DNA from: Hyaloraphidium curvatum SAG 235-1
Taxonomy: Eukaryota; Fungi; Monoblepharomycota
Assembly: GCA_025558095.1 (NCBI GenBank)
Contig: JAIVFI010000022.1
Coordinates: forward strand, 248,001-312,000
Direction of reading: 5' to 3'
DNA length: 64,000 nucleotides
The notes under the pieces are model-generated. The model did not search any database, was not told the DNA's origin, and worked only from the letters and a program-made list of their open reading frames with translations. Numbering within the stretch: the first letter of the stretch is position 1; each line of letters opens with the position of its first letter. Below are positions 1,895-33,511 of the stretch, piece after piece. The position numbers and the translations under genes are program-made.

Positions 1895-3520
1895 ATGGCC
1901 TTCGTCGAGCGGCATGGCCACCGCCTAGTTCTGAACGGCCGGCCGTTCCGATTCGTCGGCGTCAACATTCCGAACCTGCACATAATCGAAGATGGACCTC
2001 CGGAATCGCCTTGGATCGTGCCGGACGCGTGGGAGGTGGAGGATGCTGTGCGGACCGCGAAGCACATTGGCGGCGACAAAGCGGTCCTGCGAATCTGTGG
2101 GGGTCGCCTTGCCGAAGCCGATCCGGCTGGACTGAGCTTTGCGATGCTTGCAGATACGCCGCGCTTCGGGCTGCCGTCTTCGCCGAATCCAGAGCTACTT
2201 CACGTCGTCCTGCCCCGGGAGTTCAACGAGTCGCTGTTCGTAGCGTACGACCGGATCCTCGAAACTGCAGGGAGGCACGGCGTCAAGGTGATCATTCCTT
2301 TCGTCAACCCTTGGCCGGGAGAGAAGTGGGGCGGGACCGAGACCTACGAGAAGTAGGTCGCTTTGGTTGCCTTCCGCGGTCTAGTCACAAAAGTTCGTGA
2401 ATAGGTTCTTCGGCGAGAACTTGGGATCCTTCTTCACGTCATCCCGAATACGGGACCTATTCTTTGAGTTCGTGAGGTAGGCATGCCATTCTCGCGTTTC
2501 CGAAACAGACTGCTCACACCCTCCAGCTACCTACTCAACCGAATCAACACCCTCACCAACGTGCGCTACGGCGACGATCCCACCATCCTGTGCTGGCAAT
2601 CCGGCAACGAGCTCCACCACATCCACGGCCGCCCCCCCGCGGCCTTCACCCGCGCCGTCGCCGCGCACGCGAAGCGGCTCGCCCCGCGGCACCTCTTCTG
2701 CGACGGTAGCACCAACGGCGAGGGCGGTTTCGGATGGCCGGACGAGGTGCTCGCGGATCCCAATGTGGACATGGTCACCACGCACACGTATTCCAACATG
2801 GAGGCGGGGTTTGTGCGGAAGCTGTGCGATTCGGTCAGGGGGCACGGCAAGGCGCTCTTCGTGGGCGAGTTCGGGTTCAACGACGTGCGCAAGGTCGGGA
2901 GCTTCGTTGGCGGGATCGCGGGACTGCAGGACTGCGCGGGAGCGCTTTTTTGGAGCCTCCGGTTCCGCGCACGCGGGGGAGGCTTCTACTCGCACCACGA
3001 GTTTGACAACTTCTTCGCCCTGCACCACCCGGGCTTCGCCGCCAGAGTTTCGGAAGGGTTTCCAGAAGACGAAGCAGAGCATTGGACCGCGCTGACGGCC
3101 GCTGCGGCCAAGATCGCCGGGGCAAAGGTGCCCAAGCTCCCCGTTCCGGATGCTCCCGTTCTCCTCGCCGTCAGGGTCGAGAAGCTGCCCTCGGGGGCCA
3201 AATGCTGGCTGCGTTGGCGATCGAGTACTTTTGCGGAGGGCTACGCCGTGGAACGCAAAGCCGATGACGGGGCCTGGGAGCCCCTCCGACCGGGCAAAAG
3301 TGTACGGCCATCTGGGCTGGCTGGGATCGGGGCTGCGCTCGGCCTTGGCAAAGGCGGCGACCGGGCGTCTTGGATCCAGGACAATGTCAATGCGGTGAAC
3401 GGCGGTGAGGCCTTCGCGGACGAGCTTCGGGCGGTGGTATCCAAGGTCGCCTACAGGATCGCCGCACGGAATGCTACGGGTGGATCGCCGTGGTCAAACG
3501 AGGTCGAAGTATCTCTCTAG
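1895..3520 (+). CDS. GH5 glycoside hydrolase (endo-beta-mannanase-like) with C-terminal FN3-like domain, multi-exon
   Basis: LNGRPFRFVGVNIPNL start; acid/base ILCWQSGNEL; nucleophile LFVGEFG; GALFWSL; C-terminal LRW...YAVER...YRIAARNATGGSPWS. Confidence 0.85.
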
Positions 3521-5202: not shown

Positions 5203-6603
5203 ATGCCACTTGTTCTGCTGACGGGCTATCCGTGCTCCGGAAAGACGACCCGGGCAAAGCAGCTGAAGGAGCTCTTCGAGACCCGGGTCGAGCGGTTGCC
5301 CGCCGCGGTCGTGGTGCCGACAAAGACCATCGCGTCGCAGGGCGTCCTGGACGCTTCCTCTGGCGTGCCCGCACCGTCATCGACGGTCGCAAGGCAGCAA
5401 ACGCCGAGTGGGACCGAAGCTGCAAAGCCATCGTCGTTCGTCAAGTCGTCCTTTAGGAGGACGGCGCCCCAGGCGGAGACGGAACGTGTCGTGGGGACCG
5501 TGGACTCGGACACGCCCCCTTCAGCTGCGGACGATGGGCAACCGAACGGCGAATCGTCTGGCTCTTCTTCGGAGAAAGATCGGTGGACAGTCCATGTCAT
5601 TAACGACGAGATGTTTGGAAGCGTCCGGAGCGAGGCGTACAAGAGTTCGTGCCCTGTTTTTCCTATCCCTTGGACCTTCTGGAACCCTCTTCCCCCCCTC
5701 TACCAGATGCCAACGAGGAGAAAAAGTTCCGGGCCATGGTCATGTCATCGGTAGAACGGCTCGTCAGCAAGGACACCATCGTCATCGTCGACGCCATGAA
5801 TGCCATCAAAGGCTACCGGTACCAGCTCTACTGCGTCGCCAAGGCGCTCCCTACCCAGCATTGTGTTGTGGGATCATGTTTTCGTGGCTCGTGTCCGCCT
5901 TGATTTGACGGATTCCTTGTCCAGATCAAGTGCGATTGCCCGCGAGATACCGCGAAGCAATGGAACAAGGAGCGCGACTCTGATTCCTATACCACGGAGC
6001 AGTCGGTGCTTCCCACGGATTCCGTCTCTCCCTCCCTCACACCCAGGCAGGATGGACGACCTCATCACCCGCTACGAGGAGCCGATCGAGACCAACCGCT
6101 GGGACAGCCCGCTCTACACCCTGGCGCCCGACGACGACCTCCTGGACGCCGTCCCGTCGGCCGACTCGGACGTCGGCGACACGCGGTTCGACCAGATTGC
6201 CAGGCTGGTGCTGAGTAGGGCGCCGCCGAAGCAGAACATGAGCACGATGAGGGTGCGTTTCGCTCCACCCCGGTTTCCTCGCCTTTCTTACTCTTATCCC
6301 AACTTTCGTTTGCTCCAGAACCCGATAACTCAGACCAACTACGTGCAGAACGTGGACAAGCTGCTGAACGACGTCATCCAGGCCATCCAGTCGCACCAGG
6401 CCTCATACGGGGCCTACGCCTCGCCGCAGTGCCCGATACCCGACTGCCAGCTAAAGGTGGACCTTCCCCCGCGGATCGTCAGCGCCGCCGAGCTGCGGAG
6501 ATTGAAGAGGGGCTTCGAGAACCTGAACAAGCTGCGGCGGGTGGAGGACATGGGGAGGGCAGTCGAGACCTTTGTGGAGTACCTGAACGGGGTGCTGCGA
6601 TAG
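5203..6603 (+). CDS. KTI12: KTI12 (Elongator-associated, PSTK-like ATPase), multi-exon
   Basis: MPLVLLTGYPCSGKT P-loop; IVIVDAMNAIKGYRYQLYC; RYEEPIETNRWDSPL; AELRRLKRGF. Confidence 0.92.
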
Positions 6604-30344: not shown

Positions 30345-31459
30345 ATGCTCTCCGCGGAGGACCCGCAGACGTCGGCGCCTGCGCCGCCGTCGGCCCCGCC
30401 GTCCGCGCCGCTCGGCGATGCGCCCAAGGCACGCCCCGCGCGCCGGCCCCCCGCGCCGCTCACCTCCCCCGCAGAAGTTCGGCGCGTTCGGCCCCCGCAA
30501 AACCGCCTCCGAGGCCGCCGTGCCCGCCATCGACCTCTTTGCATCCCGCAACGCCGCCCCCGCGCCGTCCCCCGCGGATCTCGAGCGCAAGGCCGATGTT
30601 GCATTGACACGCGCCGTTGAAATCGATGTGCCCAAGGGGGACCCGAACGATCCCGAGGCGGTCAGGCGGACGCTGGAGATGCAGGCGAGGGGCGTGAAGC
30701 CGGGATCCGAGTTCAAGCCGAACTGGACGGGGAAGTGGGGGCCGTACGAGGTGCGAAGGGCGGGGACCACCCCGAGCGGACCGCTCACGGGCGGGCAGGA
30801 CAACCGGCTGCTGCTCGCCGACGTGCTGAAGCAGGTAGCCAAGCGCGAGTTCGACGCCACCCAGTTCGATTCCAACGCCAAGTTCAAGGCCAATGCGATG
30901 AACAAGGCGTGGCGGAACATTCTGGCATGGCACGAGGAGATCAAGGACGGCAAGACGGCGCTGAAGGAGGTGCGCCGGCTGCCTCGCAGAGATTTCATGG
31001 ATTTGCGGTACTGAAATCGTGCGGCAGATAGACGGGTGCGGCAAGAGCATCGCGGAAAAGATCGACAAGATCTTGAAGGACGTGGGTGCCGGGTCTTTTG
31101 GCGAGACAACATGTAGGCCGACCCGTTCCCAACAGAAATGCCTCGAGAGCAGGGACATGGTCTTCGTGCGTGTTTTGTGGGCCCCGTTTGATCCAGTTCT
31201 GACCCTCTTCCTGCAGCATCCGGACGGGCAGATGAGCTTTGAGTAGGCCTCCCGCCTGCCGCTGCCCTGCTTTGGCCAACGCTCCTTCCCTCGCAGCCAA
31301 ATGACGAAGAAGGACAAGGAGAAGCGCGGGGCGACGGACGAGGAAGAGGGCGGGGAAAAGAAAAAGCCGCGCAAACGGGCCGCGGCGGACGACGGCGGGG
31401 AGAAGAAGAAGCCGGCGAAGTCCCGCAAGAAGAAGGCCGAGTTTGCCGACGACGCGTGA
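30345..31459 (+). CDS. Small protein with stand-alone DNA polymerase beta-type 8-kDa (HHH_8) domain and Lys-rich tail, 5 exons
   Basis: NRLLLADVLKQVAKRE...FKANAMNKA...IKDGKTALKE/IDGCGKSIAEKIDKIL; first intron is GC-AG (30429-30474); TGA at 31457-31459. Confidence 0.75.
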
Positions 31460-31501
31460 AAGCGCCAGGCGGAGGGGAGATACCGTTGATACCAATGCCG
31501 C

Positions 31502-31507
31502 TTTATT
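31502..31507 (-). promoter_or_regulatory. Polyadenylation signal AATAAA of the selenoprotein H transcript
   Basis: tttatt on the + strand, about 65 nt beyond the SECIS. Confidence 0.55.
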
Positions 31508-31572
31508 CCGGCCTCGTTCGATCCATTAGATGACTCTTTCGTTCGGCAGCCTCGCCGCTGCGCGCGGCGCTG

Positions 31573-31652
31573 CCGGTCCCCGCGAGACGGAGGTCAGGAA
31601 CCCGCCAAGAAAGCTTTGCGGCGGGCCCGTCATGTGCCTCTGCGGGGTCCGG
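31573..31652 (-). promoter_or_regulatory. Eukaryotic SECIS element (3' UTR)
   Basis: AUGAC (31633-31629), about 10-bp helix II, AAA 11 nt after the core (31617-31615), UGAC (31596-31593), GC-rich helix I. Confidence 0.9.
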
Positions 31653-31692
31653 GGCACCGCGGCGCGGCGGGCGCCCGTCCGCCCGGCGCCGA

Positions 31693-32290
31693 TCAGGCAG
31701 CCTTGCGGACCATGTCGACGAGGGCGTCGAGGTCCGGGAACTTGTCGGAGCGCGGGGGCCCTGTGCGGCACGTATGAGCTCCAGTCGGCCGGGACGTTCG
31801 TCGGACGCACCCTTGGTGAGACCGTCCCACACCTCGACCTCCTTGTCCCCGCTCCTGACGATGAAGTTGAACGCGCCCCTGCGGGGCTTGCCGTCCGCGA
31901 GCTGCGCCTTGAAGCCGGCGGCCTTGAGGGCCTCCAGAGCCTTGTTGGCGCGGCCCCGGTACGTGCCTCAGCTATTGCTGGATTCGAGGCGTGCGTGAGA
32001 GGGGGACGGCGTGCCTCGCCCAATCGAGCGACGCACCACCGCTCGAGGATCACCTCGACGCCGGCGGATTTCGCGGGCACGGGCTTCTCCTCCTTAACTT
32101 CGGGTTCGTCCTTGACGTCCTCTTCTTTCTTGGCCTTGCCCTTCTTGGCGGGCTCCTTCTTCTCGGCTTTGGGCGCGGCCTCGGTCTTGGGCGCGGCGGC
32201 CTTCCTGCCGCGTTTGGCGGGGGCCTCCTCGGCCGGCGGTGCATCGGCAGCCGCCTCGGCTTCCGCCGCGGCCTTGCGCTTGGGCGCCAT
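31693..32290 (-). CDS. SELENOH: Selenoprotein H (Rdx family), CxxU motif, Sec UGA at 31970-31968; exons 32290-32037, 31977-31811, 31760-31693; 162 aa
   Basis: Spliced VILERCNSUGTYRGRANKALEAL...KPRRGAFNF...VWDGLTKGPPRSDKFPD matches the SelH pattern; Lys/Ala-rich N-terminus with KRGRK; SECIS downstream. Confidence 0.93.
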
Positions 32291-32569
32291 CGCGAGTGCC
32301 CGACGCGAGCTGCGATTCCGGATCTCGGGACGGCGGGATCGATCGTGCGCTTCGATCACTCCAGTAACGGGCTCCCCTTCAACGTGCGGCAACTTGCCCC
32401 TTGGAGCTTCGAGGAGTTTCTGAGGACGGGCTCGGGCCGAGCTTTCGGGCATCGCATTGCTTCTGGGCCGTTTGCCGCGGAGACGTCGGTTCGCAGGACT
32501 CGTCGTGGGACTGCTCCGAGGGGCGGCCTTCCTCCATCGCAAGAGCCCGGAGAATCCAAAAGCAAGGAC

Positions 32570-33511
32570 ATGGAACCTCAATTCCCCTCGGGTGGCGGCG
32601 ACACCTCCACTCCGAAGGCGGCCGACGCCGTCGCCGCCTTCATGGAACCTCAATCGCCCTCGGACAACTTGGACCCTTCCTCCGCGAACGCCACCGATGC
32701 CGCTCCGACCTTCCCCGAGGAACTCGTCGAGCACATCCTCTCCATCCTTGTCGCCGACTCGCCCGCCTCGCTCCTCCGCGCCGAACGCGTCTGCCGCGCC
32801 TTCCGCCGCATCGGCCGCGCCGTCCTCCGCCGCGCCGTCGAATCCGGCGGCCTCATCGAGCCCTTGCTCCTGACCGGCGTCGTGTTCGACCAACAGCCGA
32901 ACCAGGTGGCCCAGCGCGTGGTGTGGAACCCCGTCGCGGGCGGGCAGGGCGACGCGGTGCTCTTCCGCCCCGCCTACACATGCTTCCTCCGCCTCTCCAA
33001 CGTGGCCGTCGTCTCGGCACTCCCGGACCCCTGCGTCAAGTCGACCGGCACCGATCTTAGCCACATCCCGACGGGCCTGGTGGTGCGCCTCGTCGATGAC
33101 GGCAAGCTGATGGTCTCCTTCCACGCCTCGTGGGTGGCCGCGTACGAGAGCGCGAGGCGGCGGCCGTGGGAGGGCGCCGAAATCCCGTTCGCGCTGAGGG
33201 TGCCGCTGGCCCACTGGGCACAGGACGAGCGGAGGCGGTTCGCGGGCCTGCCCGAAGGCACCGATGCCACTCTAACGGGCAACGTCAACATGGACCAGCG
33301 GTCGGGGGAGACGACGGTGCGAGTGAAGGAACTGGGGCTGCCGCTTGCGGCCGTGGCGAGGAAGCTGGCTATCGAGGAGGCGGAGCTGGAGAAGCAGGGG
33401 GGCCGGAAGACGGCGTCGCACTTTTCCGAGGCAGTGCGGATGTTCCACGTCGCCCAGGCCGGGAAGGTCGCACGCGATGCCCCGGGCCAGCCTGCAGAGG
33501 TTCAGCAGTAG
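32570..33511 (+). CDS. F-box domain protein, intronless
   Basis: FPEELVEHILSILVADSPASLLRAERVCRAFRRI is an F-box pattern. Confidence 0.8.
   Translation: MEPQFPSGGGDTSTPKAADAVAAFMEPQSPSDNLDPSSANATDAAPTFPEELVEHILSILVADSPASLLRAERVCRAFRRIGRAVLRRAVESGGLIEPLLLTGVVFDQQPNQVAQRVVWNPVAGGQGDAVLFRPAYTCFLRLSNVAVVSALPDPCVKSTGTDLSHIPTGLVVRLVDDGKLMVSFHASWVAAYESARRRPWEGAEIPFALRVPLAHWAQDERRRFAGLPEGTDATLTGNVNMDQRSGETTVRVKELGLPLAAVARKLAIEEAELEKQGGRKTASHFSEAVRMFHVAQAGKVARDAPGQPAEVQQ

What the first reader, a model, noticed from the sequence alone, without database searches (positions are those of the whole stretch)
31693..32290. Hidden UGA-recoded selenoprotein H in a fungal-type genome
Seen: exon 1 ends ...GAG CGG TG|gtgcgt and exon 2 begins cag|C AAT AGC TGA GGC, giving C85-N-S-U88. 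The frame then continues for 74 codons through a second intron with SelH hallmarks (KPRRGAF, W.G..KGPPR..KFP). Exon lengths 254+167+68 keep the frame. The ORF track misses the gene entirely. Known: CxxU is the Rdx-family redox motif; fungi were long thought to lack selenocysteine, and it has been reported only in a few early-diverging lineages (including the monoblepharid Gonapodya). Inference: this organism has a working Sec recoding system, probably mis-annotated by standard pipelines.
Basis: partly seen in the sequence, partly recalled or inferred. Interest (0 to 1): 0.9.

Follow-up and report, generated by a model that had tools for sequence, protein, structure and literature searches.

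The report
Mis-annotated selenoprotein H gene in a fungus
This is a real, transcribed three-exon gene of the early-branching fungus Hyaloraphidium curvatum for a small SelenoH-type redox protein whose active site holds selenocysteine encoded by an in-frame UGA; the public annotation splices that site out, but the kind of gene is already known from a few early fungal lineages.

Summary
The gene lies on the minus strand, with exons 32290-32037, 31977-31811 and 31760-31693, and reads C85-N-S-U88 with the TGA at 31970-31968.

- **Transcript:** a contig from a public run removes exactly these two introns and keeps the TGA.
- **SECIS:** a SECIS hairpin lies 50 nt after the stop (31582-31642). It is below Rfam's cut-off, but it is one of only five hits in the 32-Mb genome. 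A model built from the other four finds it as the best hit in the window.
- **Machinery:** the genome has candidate loci for all six core Sec factors: tRNA-Sec, PSTK, SepSecS, Sec-containing SPS, eEFSec and SBP2.
- **Relatives:** genes from three other organisms keep a C-x-S-UGA motif at the same place. Sequence after the UGA is under purifying selection (pS 0.62, pN 0.21). Several relatives pass Pfam's Rdx cut-off.
- **Annotation:** the public protein KAI9016718.1 (Hyaloraphidium curvatum) skips 113 nt, which cuts out the whole redox motif.

Sec use and SelenoH are already reported in early fungi (Mariotti et al.), so this is a new member of a known kind. The scan had already noted other selenoprotein genes, including a 'SelenoH-like' one, on other contigs of this genome.

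The parts
32037..32290 (-). Exon 1: ATG at 32290, 84 codons of Lys/Ala/Glu/Pro-rich basic tail (PKRK, KRGRK) ending in the strand VEVILER, plus the first two bases (TG) of the Cys85 codon
   Evidence: The transcript contig covers 32257-32037. The same MAPKRKAA start and (V/I)EVILER end occur in relative L030.
31978..32036 (-). Intron 1, 59 nt, GTGCGT..CAG, phase 2, splitting the Cys codon
   Evidence: It is removed exactly in the transcript contig. L030 has an intron at the same position and phase.
31811..31977 (-). Exon 2: last base of Cys85, then Asn-Ser-Sec(UGA)-Gly and 51 further codons (helix, KPRRGAF strand, VEVWDGLTK)
   Evidence: The transcript contig covers it with 0 base differences. 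Relatives hit it in tblastn.
31968..31970 (-). In-frame TGA = Sec88 of the C-N-S-U redox motif
   Evidence: TGA is kept at the homologous place in L030, L036 and L038.
31761..31810 (-). Intron 2, 50 nt, GTGCGT..CAG, phase 1, splitting a Gly codon
   Evidence: It is removed exactly in the transcript contig. Relatives P0004 and P0007 read straight across this point without an intron.
31693..31760 (-). Exon 3: (G)PPRSDKFPDLDALVDMVRKAA and the terminator TGA (31695-31693)
31582..31642 (-). SECIS element in the 3' UTR. The AUGA core is at 31633-31630, followed by a helix of about 10 bp, an apical loop starting AAA, and UGA on the 3' side. In the mRNA the core lies 284 nt after the Sec codon.
   Evidence: RF00031 full-length match at 21.6 bits. 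The leave-one-out model R1 gives 21.2 bits, E 0.036, the best hit in the window. Fold.

Best explanation
A functional nuclear gene of Hyaloraphidium curvatum encodes a 162-residue SelenoH-type (Rdx-family, thioredoxin-like) selenoprotein.

Shown: the gene is transcribed and spliced at two short GT-AG introns. The mature mRNA keeps an in-frame UGA inside a C-x-S-U motif and carries a SECIS hairpin in its 3' UTR.

Inferred mechanism: SBP2 binds the SECIS and recruits eEFSec carrying Sec-tRNA(Sec). That tRNA is made by SerRS, PSTK, SepSecS and SPS. UGA88 is therefore read as selenocysteine rather than stop.

Inferred function, from what the literature reports for human SELENOH: the protein has a long basic N-terminal tail, which is likely to target it to the nucleus or nucleolus and to bind nucleic acid. 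The tail is followed by strand, CxxU, helix and a small beta-sheet/helix domain that acts as a thiol/selenol oxidoreductase.
For: - Gene structure and frame.
- Transcript: one contig of run X1 lies on 32257-32037 | 31977-31810 | 31759-31297 with no base differences, so both introns are removed as predicted and the TGA is kept.
- SECIS: a full-length RF00031 match at 21.6 bits. Only 5 matches at E<=10 exist in 31.9 Mb, and this is one of them. A covariance model built from the other four, without this one, ranks it first in the 64-kb window at 21.2 bits, E 0.036.
- Machinery in the same assembly: tRNA-Sec at 78.2 bits with anticodon TCA. SepSecS at 198.9 bits. SPS at 169.8 bits with UGA in KG-U-GCK. 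eEFSec domains III and IV at 54.5 and 41.2 bits, with no hits in the controls. PSTK, whose best model is the eukaryotic PSTK equivalog on both exon pieces. SBP2, whose best solved-structure match is human SBP2 7zjw_B at E 2e-6, against 0.1 for eL30.
- Conservation: L030 has IEVILER-C-N-S-UGA-G with changed Asn and Ser codons but the same TGA. L036 has IEH-C-T-S-UGA and L038 has IEH-C-K-S-UGA. L038 has a SECIS at 31.9 bits.
- Selection after the UGA, window vs L030: pS 0.62 and pN 0.21, with third-position changes dominant.
- Family: a profile of the post-Sec domain finds P0008 at 2e-12 and P0011 at 1e-8 in 5.8 billion proteins. P0008, P0009, P0011 and the full-length P0019 pass Pfam Rdx's cut-off.
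- Fold: the ESM Atlas feature search and shape search both put Rdx clusters first.
- Literature: human SELENOH has Cys41-x-Ser43-Sec44, a thioredoxin-like fold and a basic N-terminal NLS/DNA-binding tail (PMC10646972). SelenoH is a selenoprotein of Sec-using fungi (10.1101/314781).
Against: - No protein-level evidence shows that Sec is inserted.
- The SECIS scores below Rfam's gathering score (21.6 vs 35), and its genome-wide E-value is 1.8.
- Pfam Rdx does not hit the window's own exon pieces or the public model directly. The link to Rdx runs through intermediate relatives.
- The partial fold has modest confidence (pLDDT 68), and Foldseek found nothing in the PDB.
- No sequence named SelenoH by a database could be fetched, so orthology to animal SELENOH was not tested by alignment here.
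- The transcript contig stops at 32257, so the first 33 nt of the CDS have no RNA cover.
- Run X1 is only guessed to be RNA by its record, although its intron-less contigs show that it is. It may come from the same strain as the assembly.
Confidence: 0.92

Rival explanations
1. The public gene model is right. A 113-nt GT..AG intron (32053..31941) removes the UGA, and the product is a 144-residue protein without the redox motif (KAI9016718.1).
For: The model exists in NCBI. Its intron has GT..AG ends and keeps the frame.
Against: The transcript contig runs without a break from 32257 to 32037 and from 31977 to 31810, so it contains the bases that this model removes. The removed 18 codons, VILER-C-NS-U-GTYRGRANK, are conserved in L030. 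The model would delete the first strand and the active site of an Rdx fold.
Confidence: 0.02
2. UGA88 is an ordinary stop. The gene makes only the 87-residue basic peptide, or it is a decaying pseudogene, and the downstream frame is a chance open frame in a GC-rich genome.
For: Long spurious ORFs on both strands are common in this 65% GC window. No protein data exist.
Against: The downstream frame is 70% identical to L030 at the protein level, with pS 0.62 against pN 0.21. It is also found in at least three other organisms, always behind a CxxU-UGA. A SECIS sits in the 3' UTR. The complete Sec machinery is present, including a Sec-containing SPS.
Confidence: 0.02
3. It is a genuine Sec-containing Rdx-family protein, but it is not an orthologue of animal SELENOH. 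It would be a separate Rdx subfamily that only shares the basic tail plus CxSU layout.
For: No named SelenoH sequence was aligned here. Pfam has only the general Rdx model, and that model does not hit this protein directly. The C-x-S-U spacing alone is not specific within Rdx.
Against: Mariotti et al. found SelenoH to be the Rdx-type selenoprotein conserved in Sec-using fungi, with a C-terminal fragment in the related Gonapodya. The layout matches what PMC10646972 describes for human SELENOH: a basic N-terminal tail, Cys-x-Ser-Sec, a small domain and a protein of about 120-160 aa. The genome's other Rdx genes, a CGAU type on C43 and a CPKC type on C20, are clearly different and are not hit by this gene's relatives.
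Confidence: 0.08

Closest known systems
Human/vertebrate SELENOH (nucleolar thioredoxin-like selenoprotein, 122 aa, Cys41-x-Ser43-Sec44)
   Same: It is a small protein with a highly basic N-terminal tail, followed by a C-x-S-U motif between a strand and a helix. It has a UGA-encoded Sec and a SECIS in the 3' UTR (PMC10646972; window). From my memory of the human sequence only, the motifs KPRRGxF and KGPPRxxKFP are also shared.
   Different: The N-terminal tail is about twice as long, so Sec is at residue 88 of 162, and it is rich in Ala, Glu and Pro as well as Lys. The middle residues are N-S rather than T-S. No experimental data exist for localisation or activity.
Fungal SelenoH genes reported by Mariotti et al. 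(Bifiguratus adelaidae and Kickxellomycotina; only a C-terminal fragment in Gonapodya prolifera)
   Same: It is the same kind of gene in the same setting: an early-branching fungus with eukaryotic Sec machinery and a Sec-containing SPS (10.1101/314781).
   Different: The organism is different (Hyaloraphidium curvatum, Monoblepharomycota), and no held paper names a selenoprotein for it. Here the gene is complete and has transcript support. It has a recognisable, canonical-looking SECIS, whereas that study reported that many fungal selenoprotein genes lacked one.
SelenoW-type and other Rdx-family proteins (Pfam PF10262)
   Same: The CxxU/CxxC motif sits at the start of a small thioredoxin-like domain. 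Relatives of this gene pass the Rdx model.
   Different: This genome has a separate CGAU-type gene on C43 and a CPKC-type gene on C20. Both hit PF10262 directly, and neither is hit by this gene's relatives. From my memory of SelenoW, it has no long basic tail.

Membership tests
Eukaryotic selenoprotein gene | In-frame UGA retained in the mature mRNA | tested here: met
   The transcript contig with both introns removed keeps TGA 31970-31968 with no base differences.
Eukaryotic selenoprotein gene | SECIS element in the 3' UTR (AUGA / unpaired AA / GA core on a stem-loop) | tested here: met
   RF00031 gives a full-length match at 21.6 bits, below the gathering score of 35. It is one of 5 genome hits at E<=10. 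The leave-one-out genome-specific model ranks it first in the window, E 0.036. The core motifs are aligned.
Eukaryotic selenoprotein gene | Sec machinery in the same genome (tRNA-Sec, PSTK, SepSecS, SPS, eEFSec, SBP2) | tested here: met
   tRNA-Sec; PSTK, pieces only, below the full-length cut-off; SepSecS; SPS with U; eEFSec; SBP2, one exon piece.
Eukaryotic selenoprotein gene | Conservation of the coding frame on both sides of the UGA, with Sec or Cys at the aligned position in relatives | tested here: met
   L030, L036 and L038 all have C-x-S-UGA at the same place. pS is 0.62 and pN 0.21 after the UGA. No Cys-form relative was seen.
Eukaryotic selenoprotein gene | Selenium actually present in the protein | not testable with these tools
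   This needs 75Se labelling or mass spectrometry.
Rdx family (Pfam PF10262) | Significant match to the family profile | tested here: inconclusive
   There is no direct hit for the window's exon pieces, for P0001, or in the six-frame genome search. Relatives found with this gene's profile at 2e-12 to 1e-8 do pass the cut-off: 26.1, 22.7, 25.6 and 27.3 bits against 22.6.
Rdx family (Pfam PF10262) | Thioredoxin-like fold with CxxU/CxxC between strand 1 and helix 1 | tested here: inconclusive
Only the part after Sec could be folded. It gave pLDDT 68 and the order helix-strand-strand-strand-helix. The first row of the Atlas shape search is an Rdx cluster, TM 0.62/0.64. Foldseek against the PDB found nothing.
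SelenoH | C-x-S-U redox motif (human Cys41, Ser43, Sec44) | tested here: met
   The window has C85-N-S87-U88. Human positions are from PMC10646972.
SelenoH | Highly basic N-terminal tail (NLS / AT-hook-like, DNA binding, nucleolar localisation) | tested here: met
   The sequence feature is met: 21 K+R in 84 residues, with PKRK and KRGRK clusters, and similar tails in L030, L036 and L038. Localisation and DNA binding cannot be tested here.
SelenoH | Clusters with curated SelenoH sequences rather than SelenoW/T/V in an alignment or tree | not tested
   No database-named SelenoH sequence could be obtained.

The most novel reading that the evidence does not exclude
Hyaloraphidium curvatum may keep an unusually rich, animal-like selenoproteome for a fungus, served by SECIS elements of canonical form. 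It would include this SelenoH, a Sec-containing SPS, a CGAU SelenoW-type gene on contig C43, and the SelenoK and DsbA-type genes that other notes of this scan flag. Some of these families are not named for fungi in the literature I could read. If so, it would be the best available fungal system for studying Sec recoding, and it would answer the open remark of Mariotti et al. that fungal SECIS elements were mostly unrecognisable.
Probability: 0.45. Interest if true: 0.5.

Novelty: new member of a known kind. Interest (0 to 1): 0.35.

Why it matters
- **Annotation:** it corrects a public record. KAI9016718.1 lacks its own active site, a typical failure of pipelines at Sec codons.
- **Range:** it adds a complete, transcript-supported SelenoH to Monoblepharomycota. 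The only member surveyed before, Gonapodya, showed just a C-terminal fragment.
- **SECIS:** it shows that at least some fungal selenoprotein mRNAs carry a canonical-looking SECIS, which an earlier survey could not establish for many genes.
- **Limit:** it does not change the picture that Sec use is ancestral in fungi and was lost many times. It is one more data point for it.

Tried and rejected
- **Rfam at gathering threshold over the whole window:** nothing. The SECIS appears only with the E-value threshold.
- **Pfam on the exon pieces:** nothing.
- **Bacterial selB model:** its best locus, L010, is mitochondrial IF-2, not eEFSec.
- **KTI12/PSTK family (PF08433):** its only hit is in this window (5203-6588). 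It is Kti12 rather than PSTK.
- **L7Ae hit on C10:** this is ribosomal eL8, not SBP2.
- **Own-genome search with the exon 2 piece:** found only itself, so no paralogue. The four other SECIS loci hold no SelH-type sequence.
- **Exhaustive search with the 52-aa piece:** gave only the public model, one fragment and low-complexity matches.
- **Word-based search with P0001:** only itself. One call failed on a parameter limit.
- **Two metagenome contig scans:** blank.
- **SECIS in L030's 3' UTR:** not recognised by Rfam. The AUGA..AA..GA candidate at 3329-3371 folds no better than shuffles, so it is not used as evidence.
- **Solved structures:** the sequence search gave no relatives, and Foldseek against the PDB gave no meaningful match.
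- **Papers:** the published Mariotti paper and the Amses supplements are not held, so I could not see whether Hyaloraphidium is among the 11 Sec-encoding genomes.
- All searches used single exon pieces by reference or unaltered database proteins.

Full report
**1. The observation**

- Exon 1 runs 32290..32037 (254 nt). It ends GAG CGG TG and is followed by GTGCGT.
- Intron 1 is 32036..31978 (59 nt, ending CAG).
- Exon 2 is 31977..31811 (167 nt). It starts C AAT AGC TGA GGC, so a split TG|C Cys codon is followed by Asn, Ser, TGA (31970-31968) and Gly.
- Intron 2 is 31810..31761 (50 nt, again GTGCGT..CAG).
- Exon 3 is 31760..31693 (68 nt) and ends in TGA.

Translated piece by piece, the exons give:
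- an 84-residue Lys/Ala/Glu/Pro-rich tail ending VEVILER;
- NS*GTYRGRANKALEALKAAGFKAQLADGKPRRGAFNFIVRSGDKEVEVWDGLTK;
- PPRSDKFPDLDALVDMVRKAA.

254+167+68 = 489 nt, which is 162 codons plus the stop. Sec is at position 88 and 74 codons follow it.

**2. Transcript evidence**

One public run holds 66% of the sampled words of the locus. Its record is only guessed to be RNA. Laid on 31201-32600, one 5614-nt contig covers 32257-32037, 31977-31810, 31759-31297 and 31242-31217 with no base differences.
- It skips exactly 31978-32036 and 31761-31810. Both read CT..AC on the plus strand, which is GT..AG on the gene's strand.
- It also skips a plus-strand GT..AG intron of the convergent neighbour gene.

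Contigs without introns can only come from spliced RNA. The run is therefore cDNA, the two junctions are real, and the TGA is in the mature message. The contig merges two convergent transcripts, so it says nothing about transcript ends. It also stops 33 nt short of the ATG. The same MAPKRKAA start in a relative supports the ATG at 32290.

**3. Organism and public annotation**

An exhaustive protein search with the 52 residues after Sec returned P0001. This is NCBI KAI9016718.1, 'hypothetical protein DFJ74DRAFT_708778 [Hyaloraphidium curvatum]', on a 706-kb contig. It matches the window's exons. H. curvatum is a fungus of Monoblepharomycota.

The public model jumps from ...KSAGVE to ALEALKAAGF.... 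It uses a 113-nt GT..AG 'intron' (32053..31941) that removes the real intron 1 together with 18 codons, VILER-C-NS-U-GTYRGRANK. The transcript contig contains those bases, so the public model is wrong at this point.

**4. SECIS**

At gathering thresholds Rfam finds nothing in the window. With the E-value threshold on the 3' flank, the best hit of all 4227 families is a full-length SECIS_1 match at 31582-31642 on the gene's strand, at 21.6 bits against a gathering score of 35.
- AUGA, an apical-loop AAA and the 3' UGA are aligned to the model, around a helix of about 10 bp.
- The region folds at -37.3 kcal/mol, z = -2.4.
- Genome-wide there are only five SECIS_1 matches at E<=10: 36.2, 32.8, 28.7, 21.9 and this one at 21.6 bits.

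As a test that does not use this element, I aligned the other four. They share a SECIS-like consensus, with compensatory changes in 9 of 15 pairs. I built a covariance model from them and searched the whole window on both strands. This hairpin is the top hit at 21.2 bits, E about 0.04. The next hit, at 14 bits, lacks the core.

In the mRNA the AUGA core lies 284 nt after the Sec codon and 59 nt after the terminator, which is also UGA.

**5. Sec machinery in the same 31.9-Mb assembly**

- **tRNA-Sec:** 78.2 bits against a cut-off of 47. ARAGORN calls it tRNA-SeC with anticodon TCA.
- **SepSecS:** 198.9 bits over three adjacent pieces.
- **SPS/SelD:** 169.8 bits, with one in-frame TGA that reads ELKG-U-GCK. 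From memory, this is the catalytic Sec/Cys position. Mariotti et al. found SPS as a selenoprotein in all Sec-using fungi.
- **eEFSec:** the eukaryote-specific domains III and IV hit adjacent stretches of C1 at 54.5 and 41.2 bits, with no hit in any control genome.
- **PSTK:** a two-exon P-loop gene on C2. For both pieces the best NCBIfam model is the eukaryotic PSTK equivalog, at piece-level scores.
- **SBP2:** an L7Ae-type exon on C31. Its best match among solved structures is human SBP2 (7zjw_B, E 2e-6), against 0.1 for eL30.

PSTK and SBP2 rest on single exon pieces and are the weakest of the six.

**6. Relatives**

A profile of the post-Sec domain (A3) found relatives in 5.8 billion proteins: P0007 (8e-37), P0004, P0008 (2e-12), P0009, P0010, P0011 (1e-8) and others. 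All are gene-caller fragments that start after the point where Sec would be. Reading their contigs gives the following.
- **L030 (an ENA metagenome):** same MAPKRKAA start...IEVILER, TG|intron|C AAC TCC TGA G|intron|GA ACG TAC.... This is C-N-S-U-G again, with different Asn and Ser codons but the same TGA. Here the motif lies on an 11-nt micro-exon. The first intron is at the same position and phase, and there is no intron at the window's second site.
- **L036:** ...VKVTIEH-C-T-S-TGA-QKFKR....
- **L038:** ...VYIEH-C-K-S-TGA-QVFKR..., plus a SECIS_1 match at 31.9 bits about 70 nt after its stop.

Between the window and L030, the 72 whole codons after Sec show pS 0.62 against pN 0.21, and most changes are at third positions. 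The frame after the UGA is therefore translated.

**7. Family**

- P0008, P0009 and P0011 pass Pfam's Rdx cut-off.
- So does P0019, a full-length database protein of the P0009 cluster in which the caller wrote W for the TGA. Its match covers profile positions 1-73 and begins at KVSIEHCTSW.
- The window's own pieces do not hit Rdx directly.
- A fold of the post-Sec domain has modest confidence: pLDDT 68, order helix-strand-strand-strand-helix.
- Foldseek finds nothing in the PDB.
- The first row of the Atlas shape search and the first two rows of the Atlas feature search are eukaryotic Rdx clusters. These are leads only.
- The literature describes human SELENOH as a 122-residue, thioredoxin-like, nucleolar protein with Cys41, Ser43 and Sec44 and a basic N-terminal NLS/AT-hook-like DNA-binding tail (PMC10646972). 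The window protein has the same layout.
- I could not fetch a database-named SelenoH sequence. The finer motif resemblance to human SELENOH (KPRRGxF, KGPPRxxKFP) is from memory and is not a test.
- The genome's two other Rdx genes are different and are not hit by this gene's relatives.

**8. What is known**

Mariotti et al. reported eukaryotic Sec machinery and seven selenoprotein families in five non-Dikarya fungi (bioRxiv 10.1101/314781; I recall it was published in Nat Microbiol 2019).
- SelenoH was present in all except Gonapodya prolifera, where only a C-terminal fragment was seen.
- Many genes lacked a recognisable SECIS.

Amses et al. 2022 mapped Sec use to 11 early-diverging fungal genomes, and Hyaloraphidium is in their taxon set (PMC9457484). 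I could not see which 11 they are. No held paper names a selenoprotein of Hyaloraphidium.

**9. Verdict**

This is a real Sec-encoding SelenoH-type gene that is mis-annotated in GenBank. It is a new member of a known kind and is not a surprise for a monoblepharid fungus. Its modest added value has three parts: the corrected model, a complete SelenoH in this phylum, and a canonical-looking SECIS in a fungal selenoprotein mRNA.

Earlier notes of this scan had already flagged other selenoprotein genes and a 'SelenoH-like' gene on other contigs of this genome. I used them only as leads, and I verified the organism, SPS and SepSecS myself.

The joined three-exon protein was never assembled, searched or folded.

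Noticed in passing
G000 contig C43, about 206750-207175 (+), locus L028 about 1260-1689: A second Rdx-family gene reads MSSSSKVTVHTVY-C-G-A-TGA-G. After a probable intron it continues ...GYGRRYSAFERELKAEFG...KFEVTVGGVLVHSKIGGAGFVDNESKLQRIFAAIEAEL. The CGAU motif and this sequence look like a SelenoW-type selenoprotein. That family is not named in the text I read of the fungal survey. There is no RF00031 hit on C43 at E<=10.
   Followed up: partly
G000 contig C20, 442984-443287 (+), locus L027: A Cys-only Rdx-family gene, MNVRYPRLAVFY-C-P-K-C-KWGL..., with no UGA.
   Followed up: partly
L030:2968-2978 (+): In the metagenomic relative, the Sec codon sits on an inferred 11-nt micro-exon (C AAC TCC TGA G) between introns of 65 and 74 nt. 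This is inferred from homology only, with no RNA evidence.
   Followed up: partly
window 5203-6588 (+): A three-exon KTI12-family gene. It is the only PF08433 hit in the genome, and it weakly matches Chaetomium Kti12 (6qp0). It is the Elongator partner Kti12, not PSTK.
   Followed up: partly
window 31693-31695 (-) and 31630-31633 (-): The gene's terminator is also UGA, only 59 nt upstream of the SECIS AUGA core. L030 and L038 also end in TGA. The ribosome must therefore treat two UGAs in one mRNA differently. If the terminator were read through, the next in-frame stop would be the UGA inside the SECIS core.
   Followed up: no
window 31217-31459 (+) and 32370-32600: A convergent neighbour gene with a Lys/Glu-rich C-terminus, a 54-nt intron at 31243-31296 and a stop at 31459 shares the 233-nt gap between stop codons with this gene's 3' UTR. 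One transcript contig runs across both. A second contig starts about 80 nt upstream of the ATG, over a gene whose predicted product (from about 32570, +) looks F-box-like to me (untested), which suggests a very short shared promoter region.
   Followed up: no
G000: C30:527668-527729 (-), C3:1123310-1123373 (+), C3:598032-598093 (-), C41:19439-19496 (-): Four further SECIS_1 matches (36.2, 32.8, 28.7 and 21.9 bits) share a consensus with compensatory pairs. They probably mark other selenoprotein genes. The SPS gene on C2 has no RF00031 hit at E<=10.
   Followed up: partly
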